Positions 12,191-55,852 of a DNA stretch of 64,000 nucleotides are shown here, piece after piece. The position numbers and the translations under genes are program-made. The notes beneath the pieces were generated by a model that was not told the DNA's origin, did no database searches, and saw only the letters and a list, made by a program, of their open reading frames with translations. The DNA is taken from IMG/VR virus record IMGVR_UViG_3300034072_002211, positions 213,445 to 277,444 of that record. One strand, written 5' to 3'. The stretch's first letter is position 1; each line of letters begins with the position of its first letter.

Positions 12191-13885
12191 CTAAGCGTCA
12201 ACCTGTTCGTATTGACGTAACAGCGCAATGGTGTTTCTGAGCCCGTAAGCCACTGTGAAAGCACCGAAACGTGGCCCATCGCTTGAACCCAAGAGACATT
12301 CGTAGAGAGCTTGGAACCATGACCGCAACGGCTCAAACTCATGCTTCTTGCCGACCTCATAGACCTGATACTGATAATGCTCGGCGGTCATGTTTTCGAG
12401 CATCAGAGAGAAACGGGTCGCAAGCTCACTGAATGCTGCCCGCTCCTTCTCGGTGGGTTCTCGGCGAGAACGCTCAAACAGCCCCTTGTCGGTTGCGTAG
12501 GCGATGACCTTGGGAGCCATTTCCCGCGCATAAGCCGCGGTCGCGTCGGCGAACTCACGACCCTGCATCAAGTAAGCGAGCAGGTTCTCTGGCTGCTTGG
12601 CCTGAGCCACAACAGCCAAGTTGAGCATGAGTCCATGGGAGATGTCAGAGCTCAGTGGCTCAGGCAATTCCACGCGGAAGTGCCACGTGGCGTCATCGGG
12701 CGTCGTCTCAGCCTTCTGCCGCAACTTGACATACTGGTCTTCCAGCTGGGGCACGATCTCTCTGTAGAGCTTCTTTGCCGCGCGTGGGTTCTGAAACATG
12801 AACAGCATCAGGGAGCCAGTCGACCCATAGGTCAACCACTGCTCGACCGTAAAGCCGTTGCCCTTGCTCTTGCTGATCTTTGCGCCGTTTTCGTCCAGGA
12901 ACAGTTCATAGGTCAGGTTGAGCGGAGGGGTTCCGCCGAGGATCCGACAGATCTGGTTGGAAGCCTTGACGCTGTCAATGAGGTCCTTGCCAGACATCTC
13001 ATAGTCCACGTCAAAGTAGACCCAGCGCATCGCCCAGTCGACCTTCCACTGAAGCTTGGCATTGCCGTTGTGGCTCATCTGGCCACAGTGCTCACCGTCG
13101 TCCGTGACCCAGCCGATGTATCCACGTGCGCCAGTTGCCTCGGCCTTGACCTGCAGAACAGGGCCCTTGCCACACCAACGCGGCATAAACGGACTGTAGG
13201 TCGCCTTGCGATCATCCCCCAGCGTGGCGAGCATGATCTCCTGAATCTTGTCGAAGTTGTCCCAGACGCGGTTCAGCATCTCGTTGAACTTGCCGGACTT
13301 GTAATAGCGCGAGGAGCTCACAAAGCTCACAGTGCTGCGGTCGGGCGATGCTCCCACTTGGCCGCCATTGTAGTCCTTGAGGATGCGATCCACAAACTCG
13401 CAGAGCTTGTCGTTGTTGGCTTCGGCAAAGGTCATGGGATCAACCATGACTTGCGTGACACCCGGATCGTTGGAATAGGGCGAAGGAACCTCACTGAGCG
13501 GCAGGCCCAGATACTCGTTCATCCACTCGGGCATGTCGTCAGGGACCTTACGCATTGCGTCATAGTCATCCGAGAACATGATCAGACGGGTCTTGTAGGC
13601 GTTCTGCGTGAGCTCATTGAAAGCGCGCATCACCCAGAGGGTGCGGACCACCTCACCAAAGGTGCCGATATGCGGAGCGCCCGAGGGACCATAGCCGGTC
13701 TCAAAGGTCACCACATCACCAGGCTTCTTGCCCTTCTTCTCGATATGAGCGAGAAGGCTGCGGGCCTCCTGGAAGGGCCAAGACTTTGCCTGGTCGAAAA
13801 TGGTAGCCTCCTTTGCCTGCTCTGCTTTGATGGCACGGATCCGCTCGATGAGGGCTTCCTCTTCCCAGCGGTTCATCATAGCCAT
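12191..13885 (-). CDS. lysS: lysyl-tRNA synthetase, class I
   Basis: GYGPSGAPHIGT HIGH, KLQWKVDWAMRW, KISKSKGN, GPRFG. Confidence 0.95.
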   Translation of the reverse strand: MAMMNRWEEEALIERIRAIKAEQAKEATIFDQAKSWPFQEARSLLAHIEKKGKKPGDVVTFETGYGPSGAPHIGTFGEVVRTLWVMRAFNELTQNAYKTRLIMFSDDYDAMRKVPDDMPEWMNEYLGLPLSEVPSPYSNDPGVTQVMVDPMTFAEANNDKLCEFVDRILKDYNGGQVGASPDRSTVSFVSSSRYYKSGKFNEMLNRVWDNFDKIQEIMLATLGDDRKATYSPFMPRWCGKGPVLQVKAEATGARGYIGWVTDDGEHCGQMSHNGNAKLQWKVDWAMRWVYFDVDYEMSGKDLIDSVKASNQICRILGGTPPLNLTYELFLDENGAKISKSKGNGFTVEQWLTYGSTGSLMLFMFQNPRAAKKLYREIVPQLEDQYVKLRQKAETTPDDATWHFRVELPEPLSSDISHGLMLNLAVVAQAKQPENLLAYLMQGREFADATAAYAREMAPKVIAYATDKGLFERSRREPTEKERAAFSELATRFSLMLENMTAEHYQYQVYEVGKKHEFEPLRSWFQALYECLLGSSDGPRFGAFTVAYGLRNTIALLRQYEQVDA

Positions 13886-33469: not shown

Positions 33470-33755
33470 CTCGATCTAGATTCACCGGTGACTCTATCCC
33501 AGCCGAGCCACACCATCCTCCACGAGATCCCGAACCAACCGGGGTACCGCTTCATCGGACCTCACCGCGCCAGACTACTTTGCTTGGGTCTCGAGCCCCG
33601 CCCGTTTCATCTCAGTGAATCGATCTCTGCTGGAGGGGGTCCTCATTCCCTCACCGAACGGAAGCACCCATGAAAGCAGGATAGGCCGTAGCTAAAGCCG
33701 CCGTTCAAAGCACCAAGAACCTGCGGGCTTTCCCCACCTGTTCCTCAGCAGTTAT
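33470..33755 (-). ncRNA. candidate structured ncRNA
   Basis: TTGACA promoter at ~33789; CTGCTG/CAGCAG and GATTCAC/GTGAATC closing stems; GAAA hairpin; no ORF. Confidence 0.45.
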
Positions 33756-33794
33756 GGTGATGTTAAGGTGAAACTGCGGTGCTTGTCAAGCTGC

Positions 33795-34245
33795 CAAACA
33801 GAAAAGTTTTGGGTTGCAAGACCGGTTTCCCCTCAATCCCGGCACCGCCCCGTCCCAGGGCCTCACTGATGCGTCCTTGTTGTCGGGCTCAGGCTTTGTC
33901 ATCATCCCATTTGGCCTAACACGGAAAGCCCTAAGGCTATACCGATGCCGCTGGGCGTCTTCCTTCCATCTCGCCAGACCACTCATTAGAAAAACACCTG
34001 AGCAGTCCCAACGGGGTACGATCCCGTTGCACAACTTGCAACCCAAAACTCCCGATTCAATGTCTGGCGTCCACACTACCAGCACCGGCTTGACAGGGCT
34101 ATTCAAGAACCCCTGGGGACTCCATCCCCTTGCCTAAAGCACCATAGGTGAGCACACACTCAACAGGGAATTGAACCCCGCGCCGCTTGAGGATCTGCTT
34201 CCACGTCCGGCCGGACCGCTTCCACAGGGCCACGGCCCCATCATC
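33795..34245 (-). ncRNA. candidate ~450-nt structured ncRNA
   Basis: TTGACT-N17-TAGAAA promoter; 16-bp GTTTTGGGTTGCAAG helix; crossing CGCCAGAC/GTCTGGCG pairing; T-loop-like GGTTCAATTCCC. Confidence 0.5.
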
Positions 34246-39700: not shown

Positions 39701-39796
39701 TGGTAGGGGTGGAGGGATTCGAACCCTCGTCGTCGCCTAATCTGGGCTCTCGCAAGGTATAAGCTTGCCCGCTCTTGACCGCTGAGCTACACCCCC
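39701..39796 (-). tRNA. tRNA-Ile(UAU) with long variable arm
   Basis: Cloverleaf, loop CTTATAC, 23-nt variable arm, encoded CCA. Confidence 0.85.
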
Positions 39797-40189: not shown

Positions 40190-40268
40190 TGGTGGCCGTT
40201 GTGGGGCTCGAACCCACAACTCTCAGGGGTTTAGAATCCCCGGCTCTGCCAGCTTGAGCTAAACGGCC
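40190..40268 (-). tRNA. amber suppressor-type tRNA, anticodon CUA
   Basis: Cloverleaf GGCCGTT/AACGGCC, loop TTCTAAA, CCA. Confidence 0.85.
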
Positions 40269-42586: not shown

Positions 42587-43000
42587 TTACTTGCCGCGGG
42601 CTGCGATGATGCGCTCCTTGGCCATCTCGCTGAAGCGGATCTTTTCGCCGGTCGCGACCTCTTCCATGAGGTAGGGGAACTTGCGGGCTTTGGTGTTGAA
42701 GCCGATCAGCTTGTATTGCTTGCCGCGCGACGTGATGACCGCGCCGAAGTCCCGCGGTTCCAGGCCGTAGCTGCGAGCGTAAAGCTCGAAGGTCGTGCGG
42801 ATTTTGTCCTCGACGCCCTGCTCGCCGCCGACCACGAACTGAAGCTTCAGCTGGAGCGCCGAACCATCGCGGTAATACTGCCAGCGACCTTCCTGCTTGA
42901 CACCGAGACCGAGTTCAGCGGCGTAGGCCATCAGCTTTTCCATCGCGCCATCGACGATGGTCTGGCCGTTGCGCGCGTTGATGCTGGTCACCTTGGTCAT
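42587..43000 (-). CDS. hypothetical protein
   Basis: Promoter/RBS cassette, strong codon bias. Confidence 0.75.
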   Translation of the reverse strand: MTKVTSINARNGQTIVDGAMEKLMAYAAELGLGVKQEGRWQYYRDGSALQLKLQFVVGGEQGVEDKIRTTFELYARSYGLEPRDFGAVITSRGKQYKLIGFNTKARKFPYLMEEVATGEKIRFSEMAKERIIAARGK

Positions 43001-43071
43001 GTTTCCGATCTCCTGTTTGCGTTTCCGATAAACAGGTGATAGCAGGAATCAGGATAGGGTCAACCAGAAAA

Positions 43072-43569
43072 TCACCTGATTGTTTGAAGCGCCGCCTGGT
43101 AGATCGCAAAGCGGTGAGCATCCAAGCGTTCCTCTGCCTCGCTGCGGCTCAGCACCACAGGAGCCAGACACTCGTCATTCTCCACGTAGGGCTTGGAACT
43201 CATGACGTCGCCGGTATAGAACTGCTGGAACGAAATGGGCCAAGGATAGCGATAGCCCTCAGGCGCAGGAGCCTCGCAAGTCTGGATCAAATAACCCAGT
43301 GCCTTGATGTGACTAACCCAGTAGCCAGTCTCCTCCACGGTTTCCCGATGAGCAGCCGCGCAGCTGGACTCACCTGGATCAATGTGCCCGCCAGGAAACT
43401 CCAGTCCGCGACGACGGTTCTGCGCCATGACCACACTACCATCGGCCATCAGCGGGACCATGAACGCGGTCGGCGTTAGGTCCAGAGGTGTCAGAGCTGA
43501 GTCCTTGAGGAACTCAACATGGTTAGGCTGTGGAAGGTAGAGAACGTCGCTTTTGCTGTAGAGTTTCAT
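43072..43569 (-). CDS. Nudix hydrolase
   Basis: PGGHIDPGESSCAAAHRETVEETG Nudix box. Confidence 0.9.
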   Translation of the reverse strand: MKLYSKSDVLYLPQPNHVEFLKDSALTPLDLTPTAFMVPLMADGSVVMAQNRRRGLEFPGGHIDPGESSCAAAHRETVEETGYWVSHIKALGYLIQTCEAPAPEGYRYPWPISFQQFYTGDVMSSKPYVENDECLAPVVLSRSEAEERLDAHRFAIYQAALQTIR

Positions 43570-43578
43570 GCGTTCAGT

Positions 43579-43935
43579 TTACGCAGAATGCCTCTTCGCG
43601 TCTAGTTCATACTCGAGAGTCATGATGCGCTCATTCATCTTACGCTGGACCTGCAGGAGAGCTCGCTGGTTTTGGCGGACTTCCCTGAGGATTTCCTTCA
43701 TCTCTTCAGTGTCACGGTTCTGGGTGTTCTGGAGCAGGAAGACCATCAGGAACGTGGCAATGGTGGTGCCAGTGTTGATGATCAGTTGCCAGGTCTGGCT
43801 GAAGCCTGCGAAAGGACCCCAAGCTGCCCAGAGGAACACCGAACTCAATGCTAGGACAAACGCCACGGGTTTACCAAGACTGTCAGCAATCCACTCAGAA
43901 AAGAGGTCGAACTTGCTTCGTAGAATCTTGTTCAT
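43579..43935 (-). CDS. low-affinity iron permease family protein, Fet4-like
   Basis: WQLIINTGTTIATFLMVFLLQNTQNRD. Confidence 0.85.
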   Translation of the reverse strand: MNKILRSKFDLFSEWIADSLGKPVAFVLALSSVFLWAAWGPFAGFSQTWQLIINTGTTIATFLMVFLLQNTQNRDTEEMKEILREVRQNQRALLQVQRKMNERIMTLEYELDAKRHSA

Positions 43936-44011
43936 TGGCGTCACTCCCGCGACTAAGCTGGTGTCATAGGACTCCTGAGGTTGATGGAACTTTGCGAGCC
44001 GAAGCCGCTGA

Positions 44012-45013
44012 TTATTTAGTGGAAAGTTGCTTTTCCCACAGATAAGCGGTCGTGATGATATGCTGGAGATCATCATGCTCCGGCGTCCAGCCAACTATGT
44101 GGCGGATCTCACGAGTGTCAGCAACGAGAATTGCGGGATCACCATCTCTGCGAGGACCTTCGGTGATCTCAAAGTGCTTGATCTTCTGTGCGGTCTCCAG
44201 AACTTCCCTGACACTGAAGCCACGACCATAACCCACGTTGGCTGTGATCGTCCGCCCGTCCGCAATGTAGTGGAGGACATCAACGTGCGCCTGGGCTAGA
44301 TCCGAGACGTGGATGTAGTCACGAATGCAGGAGCCGTCAGGCGTGGGATAGTCTGTCCCTGCGATGCTCAACGAGCGGCGTTTTTCTCCGACCATAGCCT
44401 CGCATGCCAGCTTGATCAGATGGGTGCTCTTGGGGCTTATTTGCCCCGTGCGACCCTTGGGATCGGCCCCTGCGACGTTGAAATATCGCAGGATGCCATA
44501 GTCAATCCCATAAGCCGTGTGACACGCCTGGATCAGCTTTTCGACAGCCAGCTTGCTATCACCATATGGGTTGATGGGCAGGAGGTCATCATGCTCACGG
44601 AGAGGACGGATCAGCGTATTCTCGTCGCCACCATAGGGATCACCATAAACGGCTGCGGTGCTGCTGAAGACCAGCTTGGTTAGTCCTGTGCCTACCATGG
44701 CGTTGATGAGATTGTGGCTGGCAACCACATTGTTCTTCCAATAGACCAACGGCTGCTCCACGGACTCCGGAACCACAATGCTGCCTGCGAAGTGCATGAC
44801 GGCCTCAATGCCATTGTCCTCGAGGTAGGTCTTGAGGTCCAAGGGATCAACGAAGCGGAGGTCGGTGATCCAGAGAGGCACATCGCTGGGAATGAGTCGC
44901 TGATGGCCGGTGCTCAGATCGTCTAGGACAAAGGGCTCATGCCCAGCATCCAAGAGGGCATAGACCACGTGGCTTCCAATGTAGCCACAACCACCAGTGA
45001 CAAGAACTCTCAT
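44012..45013 (-). CDS. galE: UDP-glucose 4-epimerase
   Basis: TGGCGYIGSH, FSSTAAVYG, YGDSK, LRYFNVAGA, RDYIHV.DLA.AH. Confidence 0.95.
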   Translation of the reverse strand: MRVLVTGGCGYIGSHVVYALLDAGHEPFVLDDLSTGHQRLIPSDVPLWITDLRFVDPLDLKTYLEDNGIEAVMHFAGSIVVPESVEQPLVYWKNNVVASHNLINAMVGTGLTKLVFSSTAAVYGDPYGGDENTLIRPLREHDDLLPINPYGDSKLAVEKLIQACHTAYGIDYGILRYFNVAGADPKGRTGQISPKSTHLIKLACEAMVGEKRRSLSIAGTDYPTPDGSCIRDYIHVSDLAQAHVDVLHYIADGRTITANVGYGRGFSVREVLETAQKIKHFEITEGPRRDGDPAILVADTREIRHIVGWTPEHDDLQHIITTAYLWEKQLSTK

Positions 45014-45022
45014 GCGCGCTCC

Positions 45023-45310
45023 TTAATAGCGCGACATCTCATCCTCGAGTTCGCGCATCTCTGACATCTTGTCATAGAGCACATTGCCCACGTTGTCGAC
45101 TATCTTTCCCACACAATCGCCGTAGACGTCGAAGAGATCCTCGGCAAAGGTCTCAGCAGAGGGGAAGGGATCGCCTGACGTGCGCCAGCCCCGATCCATA
45201 ACGCTGTCGTAGGTGGGGAACTTGTGCTCCTCCACGGTGCGAGTTTCGTGGTTCCAGACAGTCACGTGGTAACCGTTGAAACTCAGCTTGTCATAGAGCG
45301 CGTTGGCCAT
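45023..45310 (-). CDS. hypothetical protein
   Basis: ORF in operon. Confidence 0.65.
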   Translation of the reverse strand: MANALYDKLSFNGYHVTVWNHETRTVEEHKFPTYDSVMDRGWRTSGDPFPSAETFAEDLFDVYGDCVGKIVDNVGNVLYDKMSEMRELEDEMSRY

Positions 45311-45687
45311 TAGTCGTGCCGCTCGATGACACGGTGTTTCTTCAGCAGGTCCAGGTCAGCCACTTCGGCGCCCTTGGCCTGCCGGTCTTCTGCGCGGTTG
45401 GTCGCATAGTAGAAGAACGCCTGTTCGTTCTCGACGAGGATGACCTCTCCCCGCTCCAGCGCAGCCTGGATCAGCTTGCCGTCCTCGGGGTCGCTTTCCT
45501 TGCCGGTGGAGATGCTCTTGCCGTAACTGTCCAGCTGACCCTCGGGGTTGAGGTAGAGGAAGCCCGCACGGACGACCTTGTGAGGGCCGCCCACGTAGTG
45601 TCCGAGGGTGGAATGTTCCACGCCCGTGTATTTGCTGACCAGCGCGAATGTGCCGTCCTCGGTGATCACGTATTTGGTGTAGCTCAC
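45310..45687 (-). CDS. hypothetical protein
   Basis: ORF in operon. Confidence 0.65.
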   Translation of the reverse strand: MSYTKYVITEDGTFALVSKYTGVEHSTLGHYVGGPHKVVRAGFLYLNPEGQLDSYGKSISTGKESDPEDGKLIQAALERGEVILVENEQAFFYYATNRAEDRQAKGAEVADLDLLKKHRVIERHD

Positions 45688-45807
45688 GAACGGTCTTCCT
45701 TGATCCAGGTCTTACATTCCCGGCAATGCCAGTGGTAAGCCTTGGGTTCCACGAAAAGGTCGAGGGTGTTGTGCTGACCGAGCCAGCACAACACCTTTCG
45801 GATCCAT

Positions 45808-46503
45808 TCACGCATAGTAGAAGCTGCCAGCGTAGTTGTTGCCGCCGGTGCGGATCGAGAGAATCGAGGCCAGCCCGATCGAGCGCACGATGATCTGGTT
45901 CTCGGCCTTCAGACCGCCCTGGATGTTGGCGCCCTCCTTGAGCTCCTTCTTCTCGAAGCCCTGGATGTCGTCCTCGGCGATCGGCTGACCGTCCAGGAAG
46001 TATTCGACCTCGCCGGCGCGCAGGAAGATCGTGTCCAGGTAATAGTCGGCGTGGACGTTGCCCTTCTTCACGTGCTGGATGAACGGGCTGTTGGGGATGC
46101 GCTCACCCCACTTGCGAGCCGACACTTCGAACCGCTCCTCGGCCGCTTCCTTGCGCTCGGCCTCGCCGGCGATCAGCGCCGCTTCGATCTTCTCCGAAAG
46201 CGCGTCGAGTTCGTCGGCGCTCAGGATGTCGACCAGCAGGCCCTTGCCCTCGTTGGCCTTCGCGGTCGCCTCAGCGAGAAGCTCGCCCGCGATTGCGTTG
46301 CGGACCATGTTCTGGTAGGTGTTGGTGTTCTTGTTCTGGGCGATCAGGACGGTCGAACCGGTCACGCGCTTGGTCACACGACCCTGCATCGGGTTGCCCT
46401 TGCCACCCTTCAGCGGAACCACCGTCTCCATGTCGAGACCGATGAAGCTGACGCCGCGGAGTGCTGCGAGGACCGTCTTCACGTTGTGCATCTGGGTAGC
46501 CAT
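45808..46503 (-). CDS. hypothetical protein
   Basis: Promoter/RBS cassette, strong codon bias. Confidence 0.8.
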   Translation of the reverse strand: MATQMHNVKTVLAALRGVSFIGLDMETVVPLKGGKGNPMQGRVTKRVTGSTVLIAQNKNTNTYQNMVRNAIAGELLAEATAKANEGKGLLVDILSADELDALSEKIEAALIAGEAERKEAAEERFEVSARKWGERIPNSPFIQHVKKGNVHADYYLDTIFLRAGEVEYFLDGQPIAEDDIQGFEKKELKEGANIQGGLKAENQIIVRSIGLASILSIRTGGNNYAGSFYYA

Positions 46504-46561
46504 CTTTTCGATCTCCTTTGTGTTTGCCTATGTCCTCTTTCTATACAGAATAGGTGAGGCG

Positions 46562-46792
46562 TCAACCAGAATTCTTAGGTCTGGTGAAGATTTTGGCAAG
46601 AAAGTTTTTGGGACAGTCGGGGTGACGCATCACGTTGTAGCCGTAACGACCGCCGAACTTCTGCTTCACGTAGCGACGGGCGAGGCGCTTGGTCATCAGG
46701 CCAGATGCGGCCTCAATACCATTGTCAACGTAATACCAGCCACCCTTCAGGGGGTTACGATAGTGCTGGTGATCAGCAATCCGTTTCGACAC
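46562..46792 (-). CDS. hypothetical basic protein
   Basis: GGAGG RBS before GTG 46792. Confidence 0.6.
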   Translation of the reverse strand: MSKRIADHQHYRNPLKGGWYYVDNGIEAASGLMTKRLARRYVKQKFGGRYGYNVMRHPDCPKNFLAKIFTRPKNSG

Positions 46793-46852
46793 TCTAGCCT
46801 CCTGTTTTACTGCGGCGCAGCATAAACCTAAAGGAGGTATCGTCAACCGATA

Positions 46853-46927
46853 TGGTGACCCCAACGGGACTCGAACCCGTGCTGCCGACGTGAAAGGCCG
46901 GTGTCCTAACCGCTAGACGATGGGGCC
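46853..46927 (-). tRNA. tRNA-Glu(UUC)
   Basis: Cloverleaf, loop CTTTCAC, CCA. Confidence 0.95.
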
Positions 46928-46939
46928 ACTTGACTCACA

Positions 46940-48262
46940 TTATGTGACGCGGACCTTATCGTCAAGATATCGCTGACCCATATCCAACTCACTTAGGTAG
47001 TGGCAGTTGAGCATATAGGGGCGAAGAACCTCTGGAATCATGACGTCATCGGTCGTCTGGTAATTCTCCAGAACCGCAACCAAAGTGCGACCAACCGCCA
47101 AGCCAGAGCCATTTAGCGTGTGGGCGTAGAACGTCTCGCCATTGACCTTATAGCGGGTGTTCATACGACGCGCTTGGAAGTCGCCGCAGTTCGAGACGCT
47201 GCTGATCTCGCGGTAGGTGTTCTGGCCAGGAAGCCAGACCTCGATGTCGTAGGTCTTCTGTGCGCTGAACCCCATGTCGCCCGCGCACAATAGCATCGTG
47301 CGATAGGTCAGGTCCAACTTGGCCAGGATCTGCTCCGCGGCGTTGAGCATATAGTCATGCTCATGAGCACTCTGCGAAGGCTCACAGACAGTCACGAGTT
47401 CGACCTTTTGGAACTGATGCTGTCGGATAAGCCCGCGCGTGTCTCGGCCCGCAGAGCCCGCCTCTGAGCGATAGCAATCGGTGAGAGCCACGTAGCGATG
47501 CCGCCCACCCAAAAGGATCTGATCCGCATGAATGTTAGTCAGGCTGACTTCAGCCGTGGGGATCAGGAACTGAGTGGGTTCACTTGCTCCATCCTCATCA
47601 GCAATACCAAAGAGATCCTCTTTGAACTTGGGCAGTTGCCCCGTTCCGTAAAGAGCTTCCTCGTTGACGATGGTGGGAGGGATGACCTCACGGTAGCCGC
47701 GCTTGATCTGTTCATCCAGCATGAACTGTCCGAGAGCACGATGTAGTCGAGCCACCGGACCCTGAAGCATTGAGAAGCGCGAGCCGCTGATCTTTGCCGC
47801 CGCGTCAAAACCCAGATCGACTTGATCCAGTTCATAATGCGGTGTGCCATCCCTTGCGCCGACCTTGCCCCAGCGACGGACTTCCACGTTACTGGTCTCG
47901 TCCGTGCCATCTGGCACATCAGCCGCAGGCACGTTGGGACACATGATCAGGAATGCCTCGAGCATCTCTTCAGCGTGAGTTGCCTGAGCAGCCCACATTG
48001 TTTCATTTTGCTTGAGAAGCTTCACCAACTCCTTGAGGGCGTCAGCTGAAGCAGTATTACCCTCCTTCATGGCTTTGCCAATTTCCTGACTCTTGGCCTT
48101 GATTAGGCTGCGAGTGTCCTGAAGCCTCGTGAGCGCATCGCTACGGCGGCTTGCGAACTGCTGGATCTTGTCGATGTGGGGATCGTGCCCGCGGCGCTTC
48201 ATAGCAGCCACGAACTCATCCGGCTTAGCCAGGATGCCCTTGACGTCAAAGTGATACTTCAT
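46940..48262 (-). CDS. serS: seryl-tRNA synthetase
   Basis: GTGQLPKF, PTAEV, CYRSEAG, HQFQKVE, YREISS, HTLNGSGLAVGR. Confidence 0.97.
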   Translation of the reverse strand: MKYHFDVKGILAKPDEFVAAMKRRGHDPHIDKIQQFASRRSDALTRLQDTRSLIKAKSQEIGKAMKEGNTASADALKELVKLLKQNETMWAAQATHAEEMLEAFLIMCPNVPAADVPDGTDETSNVEVRRWGKVGARDGTPHYELDQVDLGFDAAAKISGSRFSMLQGPVARLHRALGQFMLDEQIKRGYREVIPPTIVNEEALYGTGQLPKFKEDLFGIADEDGASEPTQFLIPTAEVSLTNIHADQILLGGRHRYVALTDCYRSEAGSAGRDTRGLIRQHQFQKVELVTVCEPSQSAHEHDYMLNAAEQILAKLDLTYRTMLLCAGDMGFSAQKTYDIEVWLPGQNTYREISSVSNCGDFQARRMNTRYKVNGETFYAHTLNGSGLAVGRTLVAVLENYQTTDDVMIPEVLRPYMLNCHYLSELDMGQRYLDDKVRVT

Positions 48263-48339
48263 AGTGCCAGCTTGCTTCCAAATTGGAATAGAGTCAACCA
48301 TTCATGGCGAAGCCCCGGAGCGTCCTCCGGGGCTTGCTC

Positions 48340-48576
48340 TTACTTCACGAAGTTGGGCTGACCTTCCTTCACGGTCCAAGTAAGCTGGATCCAACCCGCT
48401 GGAATGTAGTGCGACTTACCGTCGGCGCTGAAGATCCGATGACCTCCCGAGTCGCTGACGCTGAGCTGCTCGGGGTTCTGAATCTTCACGAAACCCTTGC
48501 TGCCGAAGTTGTAGACGCGTTCAGCCTCGCTGCTGATATCAGTGAACTTGAGGCCGCTTTCATTCTTGAATGCCAT
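48340..48576 (-). CDS. conserved hypothetical phage protein
   Basis: GGAGA RBS; flanked by terminator hairpins. Confidence 0.75.
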   Translation of the reverse strand: MAFKNESGLKFTDISSEAERVYNFGSKGFVKIQNPEQLSVSDSGGHRIFSADGKSHYIPAGWIQLTWTVKEGQPNFVK

Positions 48577-48653
48577 AGTAATCTCCTATTCTAGTAATCC
48601 CGTAGGACACCAGAGTTTAACAGAATAGGAGACTGTGGGTCAGTATTCATGGC

Positions 48654-48683
48654 GAAACCCAGACCGTTTCTGGTCTGGGTCTC
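48654..48683 (-). terminator. terminator hairpin downstream of GOLLD-like RNA
   Basis: GAAACCCAGACC/GGTCTGGGTCTC. Confidence 0.6.
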
Positions 48684-48699
48684 ATAATGTGGTCACCCT

Positions 48700-49735
48700 G
48701 AGAATGTCGGGTGACCGTCCCGGTCTCTGCGGATTATTCCCTGGATCCTACTCCAGGTATTCCCGCTCACTCCATCACCCTTGCGGGTGTAACCGGTCGT
48801 GCCGCCGTTTTTAACGTCAGGCAGTAGACGTGTCACCATATGCTTTTCGACAGTTTCCACCACACCTGCCTTCGGGGCAGTTAAGGCTTGCGGGCCCTAT
48901 ATGGCTTTCTCTATCAACAACGTCTGGATTGGGTACCAGCTCGCCGCCCTAGTTAGCTTGCGCCCCAGGGATTAGGCACTTTCGAGGTTTCCCTCATACA
49001 CATGGCCGAGTCAGGCTTTCCGTTTTTGACAGCAATGTCCAATATGCTATTACCTGCTAGGAGGTAACCCAGAGAGAAGTGCTGACTCAGTAGTTCCAAG
49101 GCCTTTTGAACCTCAGAATGCTACACTCCTCGTATCGTTCGGCTTGCGGGCCTACTAAATCGGTTTACAGGACTTGTCTGGCTTTTTACACCAACCAAAC
49201 CCTTTGACCTGCCATGAGCCCTAGGCGCGACCCTCGGACAACATGACTACCTCTTGCCACTCGATAGTAAACCTGTTTGAGTAGAGGACGCTGGGGTTAC
49301 AAGGCCCCATTCACCGGCCGCTCGTCGCCACCGGGATTATCGTGCTTTCGCACGGCAGTCGTTCTCAGGTCGTCCTACCTACTGCCACTGCTCCTTGGGA
49401 GAGCTTGACAGTCCCTCTTTTGGAGGGCAGGTGAGGATGCGTGTATTGATCCGAACCGAAGCCCGGACGGCTGGGGATGGGTCCCTTCACCACTTACTTG
49501 GGTTACCCCAAGCTACCACCACACGCGGTAATCTCTTGAAACTTTCGAGTCTCCAACTTAACACCGAAGTGTTTCGCCGTCAACTAAAAAGTTTCCGATC
49601 GATCCCTCTGCGGCGCCACACTCCCCTCGACCAGCTATCTCTGCTTCACTTAGACTGAGGATCCTTTCGGAAACCCCAGGCCTTGTTCTGCTCCTGCTGA
49701 CCTTCGAGGTGTGTAGCACCGCGTTGGTCTCATCG
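48700..49735 (-). ncRNA. GOLLD-like giant ornate RNA, ~1030 nt
   Basis: ORF-free; TTGACG promoter at 49757-49762; many GCAA/GAAA/CAAAAG hairpins; 3' motifs CGAAAGTGCCTA, CCGCAAG..TTAA, GACCGGTT, GGAATAATCC match my recollection of GOLLD. Confidence 0.7.
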
Positions 49736-49784
49736 TTCTATGTTCAACCAGTGTCTGCGTCAACAACAAAAATGCCATCCCGCA

Positions 49785-49968
49785 AACTTTTTTCTCCTCC
49801 AGGAGAAAACCAGGGTCCATAGACGTTTTGGGCCCCCAAGAGAGTTGAATCTCCTGGGGACCCATCGTGGGAGTTTCCTCCTACGTCCCTCTGCGTCTGC
49901 TCCGGTTCGAGTGTCTGGCTCACGAAGTCCAGCTGACCTTACCTTAGCGTCTGCGTTGGTTCATAACA
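49785..49968 (-). ncRNA. small RNA paralogous to the 5' end of the giant RNA
   Basis: Own TTGACG promoter; four collinear shared blocks. Confidence 0.6.
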
Positions 49969-50034
49969 TCTAGCTTTGCGACCCACAGGACGTCAACAAC
50001 CCTTTTTCAAAGAACTGTGGACAACTCTGTGAGA

Positions 50035-50845
50035 GATGCCATGGGCCCGACACCGAAGTGCCGAGCCCACGAAATGTAATGTGCTTGCCTGTGAAAAACA
50101 AGCTTTACACTGGTGTGTTCACCGAGCCGAGATCAACAGAACGCTGAGGCGCTTGGCCAATGGAACCGTTGTCTTGTGTGGTAGTGGCAGGCGAAGCAAT
50201 GGCGCCGTTGTCGCCGAACAGGAATTTGAATGGTCGGAACAAAAGCTTGCCTTGACCGGACAGCTTGTGGAGCGAGAGTCTAATCATGCTACTATTTATG
50301 CTGATAGGTTTAGAGCTCCTGGAGCCGAAACCCCAGGAGCTCAACCAGTTGACCGAAGTCTCTTGGTATTAGAGTAGGTTTCCAGCATAGGTCCAAAGAC
50401 CACTAAGTTGGTTCCTTGCTCTAACGTCGGTTTAGGGGATAGCTAACCGAAATCAACTATCCCCAACCGACAACAAGCCGAAGCCTGCTGTGGTCTCTGT
50501 GCCAGTGTCTGGAGGTTAGCCGAAGCCACACCATCGCAGTCTTTACACAAAGCCGGTTCTGGGACCCTAGTAGGCCGAAGCTTTCCAGGGTCCCAACCGA
50601 GCAAACCGAAGTTTGCTGGCTTTTGTGTAGGGTTCTGCTGTTGCTATGATCGGGCCCGAAAGCCGTCTCAGGGAGTTCAGCAGTCCTTTCACAAAACTCG
50701 GGTTTAGACCAGCTGGGTGTTCATCCGAAGATTACTAGCGCCAGCTGGTCAACCGATGAAAACCGAAGTCTTCATGGTCTCGAAAGTGTTTTGCCGCTGA
50801 GAACAAAACCGAAGTTCTGCGTCATCATTAGCATCTGCGCTTCCG
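50035..50845 (-). ncRNA. ~800-nt RNA with four tandem UUCG-capped structural repeats
   Basis: About 11 c(UUCG)g or UUUCG hairpins; repeated GGTTG..CTAAACC helix; G-U pairs favour the minus strand. Confidence 0.65.
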
Positions 50846-50911
50846 ATGCTCGCTATGTATGTGACCCGTCCGTGCCGCGCAAGAACTTTTTACAGGACAA
50901 TTACGATTTTG

Positions 50912-50932
50912 TGTGAATAAGATTGTGGATAA
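50912..50932. promoter_or_regulatory. two tandem DnaA boxes
   Basis: TGTGAATAA 50912-50920 and TGTGGATAA 50924-50932; another TTATTCACA at 51303-51311. Confidence 0.5.
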
Positions 50933-50933
50933 C

Positions 50934-51284
50934 TTAGGACGGATCCGTGAAGACCCAGCCTGACTGGCTTGCTCTCTCGACGAGCATTTCGGAGAATCGC
51001 TCCATGACCTCATCTCCGTCCATGTTACAAGGCCAGTGGGCATCAGCATATTCCAGCCCGATAGCATCCATGAGATAGCCGCGCTCATATGTGTCGAGCG
51101 AGGGCGGACCCCATTTGAGAATCAGCGAGCCGCTATAGCCGGTAATGAGAAGACGCATCAGCCGAGGATGCTTCATAATGATCGCTGCGAGCAACGCTCG
51201 ATTGGGCGCGATCAATCCACGCTCTTTGAGGGTGTTGTCACACACCTCCAGGTGCTGGGCGCTCAACGTGGATAATCGCGGCAT
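50934..51284 (-). CDS. hypothetical protein
   Basis: ORF with promoter. Confidence 0.65.
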   Translation of the reverse strand: MPRLSTLSAQHLEVCDNTLKERGLIAPNRALLAAIIMKHPRLMRLLITGYSGSLILKWGPPSLDTYERGYLMDAIGLEYADAHWPCNMDGDEVMERFSEMLVERASQSGWVFTDPS

Positions 51285-51641
51285 CCCTGTTACCTTTTCC
51301 AGTTATTCACAGTTTGTGGTAACATAGGTGGAGAGGCTGTCAACCAGGAATGTCGTCCGGGGCAGGTTGCCCTACCGGCGGCATGGACGGCCATCCTTCC
51401 ACCCCCTCGCGGGCCGGACGTGCTCCCCCGCCGACCCGGGTCGCAAGCGTAATCGGCGGGTTAGATGCTATCTGCTAGAAACCACCGCAACAAAATATGC
51501 GTAAAACCACGTAGCGCGCTCGCAAGGAAACGACCCCGACTTTTTTATCGTCGGGGTCGCCTCTGCAATGGTTCGTTGCTATCTCAGGGAGGTCGGATAG
51601 CAGAAGTGCTATTAAGCGTGACGCGCTTTAGCGTCAAGCGT

Positions 51642-54963: not shown

Positions 54964-55037
54964 CATCGGGGGATGGACTCGAACCACCGCCTAGCGCAGC
55001 TTCACGCCGCACCGCTCTACCACTGAGCTACCCCGAT
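54964..55037 (-). tRNA. atypical tRNA, identity undetermined
   Basis: Good D and T arms; loop CGTGAAG lacks U33; ends CTA rather than CCA. Confidence 0.65.
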
Positions 55038-55162
55038 ATATTCGGGTAGGGAACTTGCTGTCTTCCGACTCTGGGTCCCTACCCTAGAAAGTGCGTCGCT
55101 AGGCTTGCACAATCTCTGTGTCTGTTGATAGAGGGTTCTGGACCATCCGTCAACAACTATTT

Positions 55163-55852
55163 TCAGTCGTCGTTCGAAACGCCGACAAAGCGCAGGATGA
55201 AGAGGAACATATTCAGGAAGTCGAGGTAGAGGTTCAGAGCCCCCATGACCACGATACGTCCCTGAGTGTCACCGTCCAGGCGGGGCGTGTAGGCTTCCTT
55301 GAGCGTCTGCGTGTCCCACGCGGTCAGACCGGCGAAGATCAGGATACCCGCAATGCCGATGAACAGGTTCAGACCCGTGCTGGGAATGAAGATGTTCAGG
55401 ATCATGAGCGCCAGCAGACCGAACAGCGCGAACACCAGGAACGCACCGATGGGGCCGAGGTTACGCCGGGTCGTATAGCCGTAAAGCGAACAGCCTGCGA
55501 AGCCCACCGCGCTAGCCAGGAAGGCCATGAGGATGGAACCGCCGGTGTAGCGGCTCAGGATCACCGACAGACCGAGGCCCTCGATGACCACGAACGACCA
55601 GTAGAGAGTGTGGAGGGTGGCCAGCTTCATGCGCTCGACACCGAGGCTCATTGCGAGCACCAGACCAAGCGGCGAGAGCGCCACCAGCCAGAACAGGAGA
55701 CCACCCTGCTTGAGGGTATCGACCAGGCCGCTCGCAGTGGCGAACCACGCCGCGCCGGCGCTGACCAGGAGACCCGTGAGCATCAGATTGTAGATGCTCG
55801 TCATATAGTTGCGAAGACCCTGGTCATAGGTCTCGCCGCGAGTGAGTTCCAT
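55163..55852 (-). CDS. Bax inhibitor-1/YccA family membrane protein
   Basis: Seven TMs; FAGLTAWDTQ.LK, ALNLYLDFLNMF. Confidence 0.95.
   Translation of the reverse strand: MELTRGETYDQGLRNYMTSIYNLMLTGLLVSAGAAWFATASGLVDTLKQGGLLFWLVALSPLGLVLAMSLGVERMKLATLHTLYWSFVVIEGLGLSVILSRYTGGSILMAFLASAVGFAGCSLYGYTTRRNLGPIGAFLVFALFGLLALMILNIFIPSTGLNLFIGIAGILIFAGLTAWDTQTLKEAYTPRLDGDTQGRIVVMGALNLYLDFLNMFLFILRFVGVSNDD

What the first reader, a model, noticed from the sequence alone, without database searches (positions are those of the whole stretch)
48700..49735. Unusually long GOLLD-like RNA beside SerRS and tRNA genes
Seen: ~1030 ORF-free nt between a promoter and a terminator, rich in GNRA and CAAAAG hairpins. 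Known: GOLLD RNAs are phage-associated, lie near tRNAs, are usually ~800 nt and form multimeric cages; their function is unknown. The family match rests on my memory of the 3' motifs. Inference: an alphaproteobacterial-phage variant with an extended 5' domain.
Basis: partly seen in the sequence, partly recalled or inferred. Interest (0 to 1): 0.7.

Follow-up and report, generated by a model that had tools for sequence, protein, structure and literature searches.

The report
Long GOLLD RNA in jumbo phage
The flagged stretch is a real but divergent, roughly 1,040-nt member of the known GOLLD family of cage-forming phage RNAs, carried by a jumbo phage related to Sinorhizobium phage Phosso, with an extra 5' arm and an undescribed tandem array of structured RNA units just upstream.

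Summary
The observation and most of the interpretation hold. On the minus strand, 49731 to 48695 (1,037 nt; 1,078 nt with the 3' hairpin) is a non-coding RNA. It lies between a conserved sigma-70-type promoter and a conserved 3' hairpin. Its 3' 440 nt match Rfam GOLLD over the whole model (143.7 bits, E 1.8e-39). That is 6 bits under the curated cut-off, which is why a default scan is blank. Four orthologues score 129 to 171 bits, and cultured Sinorhizobium phage Phosso has an unannotated GOLLD at 186.6 bits. The 5' region is about 600 nt, against 420 nt in the solved env-38 RNA. A core is homologous to Phosso's 5' domain, and about 190 nt at the 5' end are clade-specific. Both parts show compensatory base changes. 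Near-identical copies of the core, but not of the flanking DNA, occur in four unrelated metatranscriptomes. SerRS and tRNA adjacency is confirmed. An alphaproteobacterial host is supported only indirectly. This is a new member of a known family, and its function remains unknown. The more novel item lies outside the flagged span. A conserved ORF-free block at 49790-50900 contains 3 to 5 tandem covarying units. Most units end in a 7-bp helix followed by N-CCA. The block has no Rfam match and no evidence of expression.

The parts
49735..49767 (-). Promoter of the GOLLD RNA: GTTGTTGACG (-35 TTGACG at 49763-49758), 17-nt spacer, -10 TAGAAC at 49740-49735. The predicted start is near 49731-49727.
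   Evidence: Conserved in four orthologues and, as a variant, in Phosso. The same 10-mer precedes a tRNA-Ser gene. The start site is inferred, not mapped.
49538..49731 (-). Clade-specific 5' extension of the GOLLD: a ~115-nt arm tipped by a GAAA loop (49722-49610), then a UUCG hairpin. It has no counterpart in Phosso, and L026 has a shorter arm.
   Evidence: 42 consensus pairs, 91.7% canonical, 9 with compensatory changes against 0-5 in slid controls. Phosso homology begins only after it.
49135..49537 (-). 5' core domain of the GOLLD. It is homologous to the 5' domain of the Phosso GOLLD and contains an invariant C-AAAA-G loop at 49422.
   Evidence: 107 pairs, 93.1% canonical, 50 compensatory against 6-11 in controls. 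nhmmer against Phosso gives E 9e-12. Covered by near-identical metatranscriptome contigs.
48695..49133 (-). Universally conserved GOLLD 3' domain, including the linker region (about 49071-48995), which holds no tRNA here.
   Evidence: RF02032 match of 143.7 bits, E 1.8e-39, model 1-416/416. 110 pairs, 57 compensatory. No tRNA found by ARAGORN or Rfam.
48647..48683 (-). Conserved 3' hairpin (48683-48654) running into the motif TTCGCCATGA (48656-48647). It is a terminator or 3'-end stabiliser and has no U-tract.
   Evidence: Conserved with compensatory changes in four sequences. Not called by the terminator scan. The motif is repeated at 48302-48311, in front of SerRS.
50364..50775 (-). Three tandem units of a new structured RNA module. 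Each has a UUCG hairpin, then a 17-19-bp duplex framed by invariant GGUU/AACC, then an irregular hairpin closed by a 7-bp helix followed by N-CCA.
   Evidence: Covariance model R1 scores 38.6, 92.2 and 115 bits. Over 14 units, 94.5% of cells are canonical and 31 of 41 pairs changed on both sides; no shuffle of 500 reaches the score. 11 of 14 units end in (A/G)CCA. No Rfam hit.
49790..50900 (-). The whole conserved ORF-free block upstream of the GOLLD promoter. It holds a promoter-like CTTGC...CATACATA near 50885-50860, a first CCA-ended hairpin (about 50857-50775), the unit array, a variable stretch, and a conserved ~180-nt hairpin-rich tail. A second GTTGTTGACG at 50000-49991 is found only in the window.
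   Evidence: Three-way alignment with 73% column identity and no conserved ORF. Structure. Present once per genome and only in this clade.
46940..48301 (-). Seryl-tRNA synthetase gene, downstream of the GOLLD on the same strand.
   Evidence: PF00587 and PF02403. The same GOLLD-then-SerRS order is found in L002 and L003.
48340..48576 (-). 78-aa ORF of unknown function lying between the GOLLD and SerRS, flanked on both sides by the hairpin-TTCGCCATGA junction motif.
   Evidence: No Pfam or PHROG match. Duplicated motif. L003 has no gene in this position.
46853..46927 (-). tRNA-Glu(UUC), the tRNA gene nearest to the GOLLD.
   Evidence: ARAGORN and Rfam.

Best explanation
Window 49731-48695 on the minus strand encodes a ~1,040-nt non-coding RNA of the GOLLD family, carried by a jumbo phage whose nearest cultured relative is Sinorhizobium phage Phosso.

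Shown here:
- A conserved sigma-70-type promoter lies directly upstream.
- A three-part RNA follows. The first ~190 nt are a clade-specific 5' extension. The next ~400 nt are a 5' core homologous to Phosso's 5' domain. The last ~440 nt are the universal GOLLD 3' domain. A conserved hairpin closes the RNA.
- All three parts keep their helices through compensatory changes.
- Close relatives of the core are present in RNA libraries from four environments, while the flanking DNA is not.

Inferred from the solved GOLLD structures (PMC12286853, PMC12990946): the 3' domains associate through kissing loops and A-minor contacts into two stacked rings. The 5' domains form the caps and set the number of subunits, so the RNA self-assembles into a hollow RNA-only cage. 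The enlarged 5' domain would then either change the subunit number or add an arm to the cap.

Inferred from context only: the gene sits in a translation island (21 tRNAs, SerRS, class I LysRS) and directly upstream of SerRS in three phages. The cage therefore most likely acts during lytic growth in the phage's handling of tRNAs or the translation apparatus. What it binds or encloses is unknown.
For: - Family match: full-length RF02032 match, E 1.8e-39. Orthologues score 171.1, 155.1, 149.6 and 129 bits, and Phosso 186.6.
- Structure: five-way alignment with 296 consensus pairs, 124 of them with compensatory changes. Per-domain compensatory counts are 9, 50 and 57, against 0-14 in slid controls.
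- Promoter and 3' hairpin are conserved.
- No conserved ORF.
- RNA libraries: contigs 90-100% identical cover only 48723-49621 in four metatranscriptomes. One is a 785-nt contig at word depth 378. The upstream 1.3 kb has no cover, and the flanking 5.7 kb of genes gives only short, unlike pieces.
- Context: SerRS, LysRS and tRNAs.
- Phage placement.
Against: - The window's own score, 143.7, is below Rfam's gathering score of 150.
- Neither RNA end has been mapped. The 3' hairpin has no U-tract, so read-through into the 78-aa ORF and SerRS is possible.
- An internal promoter-like site (TTGACG, 17 nt, TAAGTT, about 49590-49555) is conserved. It sits just before the point where Phosso homology begins.
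- The metatranscriptome contigs come from relatives, not from this phage. They stop at 49612-49621, about 110 nt short of the predicted start.
- Logan contigs carry no strand and cannot exclude DNA carried in an RNA library.
- Cage formation and any link to translation are inferences. No function is known for any GOLLD.
Confidence: 0.9

Rival explanations
1. Two RNAs rather than one. The first ~190 nt (49731-49540) are a separate leader or small RNA made from the upstream promoter. A core GOLLD of ~850 nt starts at the internal promoter-like site near 49545. The 'extended 5' domain' would then not be part of the cage subunit.
For: TTGACG-N17-TAAGTT (TTGACA-N17-TAAAGT in L002 and L003) is conserved at A2 columns 214-248. 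Phosso homology starts just after it. L026 lacks most of the first arm. The extension has the weakest covariation of the three parts.
Against: Contigs from RNA libraries run through the internal site, up to 49612-49621. The extension's closing helix and the invariant start block are conserved in four phages, with 9 compensatory pairs. The conserved 'promoter' letters overlap a conserved UUCG hairpin, so they may be kept for RNA structure.
Confidence: 0.15
2. One long precursor. The upstream array, the GOLLD and possibly the 78-aa ORF and SerRS are transcribed as an operon of more than 2-3.5 kb, which is then cut into stable RNAs and an mRNA. The GOLLD promoter only adds to this. This reading is compatible with the best explanation.
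For: There is no U-tract terminator between the array and the GOLLD, or after the GOLLD. In L003 only 85 nt separate the GOLLD from the SerRS start. The order array-GOLLD-SerRS on one strand is conserved. The N-CCA ends after 7-bp helices look like processing sites.
Against: The array has no cover in the four RNA libraries that hold the GOLLD core, and no RNA run is shown to hold it. Phosso's GOLLD stands alone, with its own promoter and a classic terminator.
Confidence: 0.3
3. Not a GOLLD but a new class of giant RNA that only shares short motifs with it.
For: No match at Rfam's gathering threshold. The 5' 600 nt match no Rfam family.
Against: E 1.8e-39 over all 416 model positions, including the pseudoknot. 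Orthologues that align end to end with the window exceed the cut-off. The Rfam model covers only the 3' domain by design, because GOLLD 5' domains are variable (PMC12286853).
Confidence: 0.02
4. A degraded or unusual protein-coding region, or non-functional spacer DNA.
For: Short ORFs of up to 87 aa exist.
Against: No ORF is conserved in position. Substitutions are concentrated in paired positions and are compensatory. Sequence conservation is as strong as in the neighbouring SerRS gene.
Confidence: 0.01

Closest known systems
GOLLD RNA (Rfam RF02032); solved examples env-38 (833 nt, 14-mer, PDB 9MEE) and Streptococcus agalactiae GOLLD (700 nt, 12-mer, PDB 9L0R), as reported in PMC12286853 and PMC12990946
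   Same: The 3' domain aligns over the whole covariance model, including the long-range pseudoknot. The architecture is bipartite, with a variable linker. It has C-AAAA-G and GNRA loops. It is phage-borne, lies among tRNA genes and has no ORF.
   Different: The region 5' of the Rfam match is ~600 nt rather than ~325-420 nt. The total is ~1,040 nt. The score is 6 bits below Rfam's cut-off. There is no tRNA in the linker. The host phage is a ~460-kb jumbo phage of the Phosso/Atu_ph07 group rather than a Firmicute, actinobacterial or marine element. The oligomeric state is untested.
The unannotated GOLLD of Sinorhizobium phage Phosso (PV764938.1, 33533-34001, inside a 1,046-nt gap between CDS 79 and CDS 81)
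   Same: It is the nearest cultured relative. The promoter is of the same type. The 5' core is homologous (E 9e-12) and so is the 3' domain. Segment 48869-48790 of the window is 72% identical to it.
   Different: Phosso has no 5' extension and no upstream array. It has a tRNA inside the linker (54.1 bits) and a classic U-tract terminator. It is not next to SerRS. It is ~966 nt long.
ROOL RNA (Rfam RF03087)
   Same: It is another large phage-associated RNA near tRNA islands that forms RNA-only cages (PMC12286853).
   Different: The sequence and fold are unrelated, and no ROOL match was found in 48200-51000 even at E up to 10.
For the upstream array only: tRNA genes and tRNA-like RNase P substrates. 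Phage T4's stable species 1 and 2 RNAs and the P1/P4 antisense RNAs are recalled from memory and were not checked.
   Same: A 7-bp closing helix is followed by one unpaired base and CCA, as at a tRNA acceptor end. The units lie in tandem in a tRNA-rich phage region.
   Different: There is no cloverleaf and no T-loop. The units are not found by ARAGORN or by the tRNA model. Each unit also carries a long near-perfect duplex. Processing and expression have not been shown.

Membership tests
GOLLD RNA (RF02032) | Significant sequence-plus-structure match to the conserved 3' domain over its full length | tested here: met
   143.7 bits, E 1.8e-39, model positions 1-416 of 416.
GOLLD RNA (RF02032) | Operational annotation threshold (Rfam gathering score of 150 bits). 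This is a curators' cut-off, not a biological feature. | tested here: not met
   The window scores 143.7. Orthologues that align end to end with it score 171.1 (L002), 155.1 (L027), 149.6 (L003) and 129 (L026), and Phosso scores 186.6. Membership follows by homology with sequences above the cut-off.
GOLLD RNA (RF02032) | Helices of the 3' domain, including the long-range pseudoknot helix, maintained by covariation | tested here: met
   110 pairs, 93.7% canonical, 57 compensatory against 6-14 in slid controls. The long-range helix at A2 columns 827-835 with 1003-1012 changes on both sides in most pairs.
GOLLD RNA (RF02032) | Bipartite build: a variable, structured 5' domain joined to the 3' domain by a poorly conserved linker | tested here: met
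   The 5' core and extension are structured and covary. They are conserved only within the clade and partly with Phosso. The linker columns vary in length and sequence.
GOLLD RNA (RF02032) | Encoded by a phage or prophage, near tRNA genes | tested here: met
   A 277-kb IMG/VR virus record with relatives of 462-500 kb. 21 tRNA genes in the window.
GOLLD RNA (RF02032) | Made as a discrete, abundant RNA (raised during lysis in Lactobacillus brevis, as cited in PMC12286853) | tested here: inconclusive
   Near-identical core sequences occur in four metatranscriptomes while the flanks do not. These come from relatives and are assembler contigs without strand. The ends have not been mapped.
GOLLD RNA (RF02032) | Self-assembly into a dihedral RNA-only cage (10-, 12- or 14-mer) | not testable with these tools
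   The RNA is far above the size limit of the complex predictor. This needs mass photometry or cryo-EM.
GOLLD RNA (RF02032) | Optional feature: a tRNA or pseudo-tRNA embedded in the linker | tested here: not met
   None in the window. Present in Phosso. This feature is not required for membership (PMC12286853: 'sometimes present').
tRNA / tRNA-like elements (considered for the upstream units) | Cloverleaf with D, anticodon and T arms | tested here: not met
   No tRNA call by ARAGORN or RF00005 in 49790-50900. The folds are irregular single hairpins. Only the acceptor-like 7-bp helix plus N-CCA is shared.

The most novel reading that the evidence does not exclude
The GOLLD of this clade works together with the tandem array upstream. 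The array would be a new class of structured RNA whose units mimic tRNA acceptor ends (7-bp helix, one free base, CCA). RNase P and 3' trimming would cut it into ~60-80-nt CCA-ended hairpins and ~65-nt twin-hairpin spacers. These would take the place of the tRNA that other GOLLDs carry inside their linker, as cargo or client of a cage whose enlarged 5' cap changes its size or subunit number.
Probability: 0.15. Interest if true: 0.75.

Novelty: new member of a known kind. Interest (0 to 1): 0.42.

Why it matters
GOLLD is one of very few natural RNAs known to build a closed cage without protein, and its function is still unknown.

- **Structure.** In the two solved examples the 5' domain sets the subunit number: 10-mer without it, 12-mer at 700 nt and 14-mer at 833 nt (PMC12990946). 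A natural ~1,040-nt version tests directly how cap size controls cage geometry. Its 5' core can be aligned to a shorter cultured relative, and its extra ~190-nt arm is well defined.
- **Taxonomic range.** The clade extends GOLLD to jumbo phages related to Sinorhizobium and Agrobacterium phages. No paper in the searched library reports this.
- **Experimental access.** Phosso grows on a laboratory strain of S. meliloti, which gives a tractable system for knock-outs.
- **Annotation.** Rfam's cut-off misses part of the family: three of the five clade members fall below 150 bits.
- **Function.** The position of the GOLLD between a tandem array of acceptor-end mimics and an aminoacyl-tRNA synthetase gene sharpens the hypothesis that GOLLD acts on tRNAs or translation.

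Tried and rejected
- blastn of 48600-50950 against 50,697 phage records found nothing.
- The invariant 16-mer at the RNA start gave 16 IMG/VR loci. Local profile searches showed that all but the known relative were chance matches.
- More specific patterns found only the same two IMG/VR contigs. They found two metagenome contigs and no cellular genome.
- L026 and L027 could not be extended or searched as whole records.
- I considered reading the contig ends at 49612-49621 as the true RNA 5' end. I rejected this because they coincide with the border between an invariant block and a variable arm, where an assembler would break when several strains are present.
- ARAGORN did not call the tRNA inside Phosso's GOLLD. 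The Rfam tRNA model did.
- The fourth GGUUG...UAAACC match, inside the GOLLD 5' core, was dismissed. It is in a different structural register and is not conserved in L002 or L003.
- MAFFT misaligned the first unit of the array with the others. The model was therefore built from six well-aligned units, and the remaining copies were found by the model.
- TAG recoding, suggested by a CUA-anticodon tRNA, is not supported by a simple frame-length comparison.
- The original GOLLD paper (doi 10.1038/nature08586) and Morgado et al. 2020 (PMC7549688) are not held. The family's full length range and 5'-domain subtypes therefore could not be checked.
- The 5' domain could not be compared with env-38 or S. 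agalactiae GOLLD, because no tool holds those RNA sequences.

Full report
**1. What is at the coordinates**

A default Rfam scan of the whole window reports only 20 tRNA matches, all on the minus strand; ARAGORN finds 21 tRNA genes. A permissive scan of 48200-51000 gives one strong match. It is RF02032 (GOLLD) at 48695-49133 on the minus strand, with 143.7 bits, E 1.8e-39 and model positions 1-416 of 416, including the annotated pseudoknot. A whole-record search reproduces it. The curated gathering score is 150, so the match falls 6.3 bits short, which explains the blank default scan. The Rfam model covers only the conserved 3' half of GOLLD. The 5' half is variable by definition (PMC12286853).

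**2. The carrier**

The window is the last 64 kb of a 277,444-bp IMG/VR virus record, which CheckV estimates to be 60% complete.

- The gene downstream of the RNA on the same strand, 46940-48301, is a seryl-tRNA synthetase.
- The window also encodes a class I lysyl-tRNA synthetase, NAD synthase, PRPP synthetase, an N6/N4 DNA methylase and a helicase.
- SerRS relatives lie in three IMG/VR phage contigs of 462-500 kb.
- The terminase of the complete 462-kb relative is 62.8% identical to that of Sinorhizobium phage Phosso (469 kb) and 55% identical to that of Agrobacterium phage Atu_ph07 (490 kb).
- The window's own helicase has Phosso as its best cultured match (E 3e-58; the next best is 5e-19).

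An alphaproteobacterial host is therefore plausible but not shown. No cellular genome holds the RNA's signatures.

**3. Relatives of the RNA**

| Source | RF02032 score | Position relative to SerRS |
|---|---|---|
| Window | 143.7 bits | directly upstream |
| L002 (462-kb phage) | 171.1 bits | directly upstream |
| L003 (465-kb phage) | 149.6 bits | directly upstream |
| G003 (500-kb phage) | 30.9 bits | 30 kb away |
| L027 (metagenome, cut at its 3' end) | 155.1 bits | not known |
| L026 (metagenome) | 129 bits | not known |
| Phosso | 186.6 bits | not adjacent |

Phosso's GOLLD lies at 33533-34001, inside an unannotated 1,046-nt gap. A tRNA is embedded in its linker (54.1 bits), and it ends in a classic terminator. 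Atu_ph07 has no GOLLD. The clade therefore straddles Rfam's cut-off.

**4. Anatomy**

A five-way alignment from promoter to 3' hairpin and its RNAalifold consensus (296 pairs, 124 with compensatory changes) give these parts in window coordinates:

- **Promoter.** GTTGTTGACG lies at 49767-49758 and the -10 TAGAAC at 49740-49735, with a 17-nt spacer. An invariant start block begins at 49731.
- **5' extension, 49731-49538.** 42 pairs, of which 9 are compensatory (slid controls 0-5).
- **5' core, 49537-49135.** 107 pairs, of which 50 are compensatory (controls 6-11).
- **3' domain, 49134-48700.** 110 pairs, of which 57 are compensatory (controls 6-14).
- **3' hairpin, 48683-48654.**

The slid controls are somewhat flattering, because the structure was derived from the same alignment. 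The difference in compensatory pairs is nevertheless large.

The RNA is 1,037 nt to the end of the Rfam match and 1,078 nt with the hairpin. The relatives measure 1,123, 1,115, 1,042 and 966 nt. The clade's 5' profile matches Phosso only from position 199 onward (E 9e-12). The first ~190 nt are therefore an addition relative to the nearest cultured relative. The region 5' of the Rfam match is ~600 nt, against 420 nt in env-38.

The promoter type recurs in front of a tRNA-Ser gene.

**5. Mosaic evolution**

The window is 84-90% identical to L027 over 49610-49135, but only 47-59% identical over 48999-48700. Segment 48869-48790 is closest to Phosso, at 72%. A metatranscriptome contig shows the same pattern. 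Its first 397 nt are identical to the window, and it then continues for 420 nt of unlike sequence. GOLLD segments appear to be exchanged between variants.

**6. RNA evidence**

Nine or more metatranscriptome runs share 7-20% of the locus's 31-mers. Four of them (gut, root, soil and leaf litter) were laid on 48640-50940. Their contigs cover only 48723-49621.

- One run has a 785-nt contig with 21 mismatches and 6 gaps, at word depth 378.
- Another has two pieces that are 100% identical to the window.
- Nothing covers 49641-50940.

As a control, the same runs were laid on 43000-48700. They gave only 40-80-nt pieces of under 90% identity at universally conserved motifs, and all of these ran on into unrelated sequence.

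This shows that close relatives of the GOLLD core are present in RNA libraries without their genomic neighbours. It does not give the strand, the ends or the expression of this particular phage. The contig ends at 49612-49621 coincide with the border of a variable arm. They are probably assembly break points.

**7. How it most likely works**

The solved GOLLDs are RNA-only cages. The 3' domains form the rings, and the 5' domains form the caps and fix the number of subunits. The 3' domain here is a full-length homologue, so cage formation is the best-supported mechanism by inference. I put it at about 0.65. The enlarged cap predicts either a changed subunit number or an added arm.

A role in tRNA or translation handling during lytic growth is suggested only by context, and I put it at about 0.3. 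The context is the tRNA island, two aminoacyl-tRNA synthetase genes and the conserved position just upstream of SerRS.

Two alternatives remain open. An internal promoter-like site near 49590-49555 could start a shorter RNA. The lack of a U-tract after the 3' hairpin leaves read-through into SerRS possible.

**8. Outside the flagged span**

The ORF-free zone does not stop at 49735. It continues to about 50930 and is conserved in L002, L003 and L026. It contains tandem units of 115-160 nt. Each unit has three elements:

- a UUCG hairpin;
- a 17-19-bp near-perfect duplex framed by invariant GGUU/AACC (fold z-scores -4.4 to -7.2);
- an irregular hairpin with fully conserved internal loops, closed by a 7-bp helix followed by one base and CCA.

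A covariance model built from six units finds 3-5 units per phage and nothing else in the window. It finds exactly one array per genome, always next to the GOLLD. It finds none in G003, Phosso or Atu_ph07.

Over 14 units, 94.5% of cells pair. Of 41 pairs, 31 change on both sides. The covariation score is 0.515, against 0.194 in shuffles (0 of 500 reach it) and at most 0.104 when partners are slid. This alignment was fitted to the model, which favours the structure. Helix-plus-CCA sites exceed shuffles in three of the four loci.

There is no Rfam match and no evidence of RNA. I read the units as mimics of tRNA acceptor ends and likely processing substrates. That is a hypothesis.

**9. Verdict**

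The flagged object is a new, divergent and long member of a known family. It is not a new class. The neighbouring array is the more novel item and deserves its own test.

Noticed in passing
window 49790-50900 (minus strand); L002:5020-5975, L003:5840-6812, L026:1880-2945: A conserved ORF-free block directly upstream of the GOLLD promoter holds 3-5 tandem structured units. Most units end in a 7-bp helix followed by N-CCA. Covariation is strong and there is no Rfam match. The array occurs once per genome and only in this clade. No RNA library is shown to hold it.
   Followed up: yes
window 50912-50932 (minus), 51267-51275 (minus), 51303-51311 (plus): A cluster of DnaA-box-like 9-mers. The only perfect TTATCCACA in the window, with a one-mismatch copy beside it, sits at the head of the upstream block and is conserved in L002 and L003. 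Boxes with at most one mismatch number 20 in the window, against 8.3 expected.
   Followed up: partly
window 48723-49621, in runs X2, X3, X4 and X9: GOLLD core sequences 97-100% identical to this subsurface phage turn up in gut, root, soil and leaf-litter metatranscriptomes. They also occur in DNA runs of three coded organisms. Why one RNA is so widespread and so similar is unexplained. Possibilities are a cosmopolitan phage, segment exchange or a shared contaminant.
   Followed up: partly
window 48700-48999, compared with L027, L002, L003, L026 and Phosso: The window's 3'-terminal GOLLD segment differs from its four clade-mates, and part of it (48869-48790) is closest to Phosso. A metatranscriptome contig shows a similar switch. 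This is evidence of recombination between GOLLD variants.
   Followed up: yes
PV764938.1 33004-34049 (L032:3505-4550): Sinorhizobium phage Phosso, a cultured jumbo phage, has an unannotated GOLLD (186.6 bits) with a tRNA embedded in its linker. ARAGORN misses that tRNA, but the Rfam tRNA model finds it at 54.1 bits.
   Followed up: yes
window 12191-13885 (minus): A phage-encoded class I lysyl-tRNA synthetase (PF01921, E 4.6e-94). Among 50,697 phage records, only an archaeal virus shows a weak match. Together with SerRS and 21 tRNAs it forms a translation island.
   Followed up: partly
window 40190-40268 (minus): A tRNA with anticodon CUA (amber-suppressor type; ARAGORN labels it Pyl). A simple frame-length comparison gives no clear sign of TAG recoding. 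TAG ends only 7 of 83 long minus-strand frames.
   Followed up: partly
window 39701-39796 (minus): An unusually long (96-nt) tRNA-Ile with the rare anticodon UAU. An intron or a long extra arm was not examined.
   Followed up: no
window 48302-48311 and 48647-48656 (minus): The junction motif (GC-rich hairpin followed by TTCGCCATGA) occurs twice, on either side of the 78-aa ORF 48340-48576. L003 has the GOLLD directly next to SerRS. This suggests that the small ORF was inserted with a duplication of the junction.
   Followed up: partly
window 49991-50000 (minus): A third exact copy of the promoter 10-mer GTTGTTGACG lies inside the upstream block. It is in front of a conserved ~180-nt hairpin-rich segment (about 49965-49790). 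This promoter is absent at that position in L002 and L003.
   Followed up: no
G003 contig 55034-55420 (L007): The 500-kb relative has only a 30.9-bit GOLLD match, 30 kb from its SerRS gene. The clade's sequence profiles do not detect it. It may be a very divergent or decayed GOLLD.
   Followed up: no
whole record G000: IMG/VR labels the 277-kb record a provirus at 60% completeness. Its relatives are 462-500-kb phages, one with direct terminal repeats, and no terminase was found in G000. The record is probably a fragment of a lytic jumbo phage genome.
   Followed up: no
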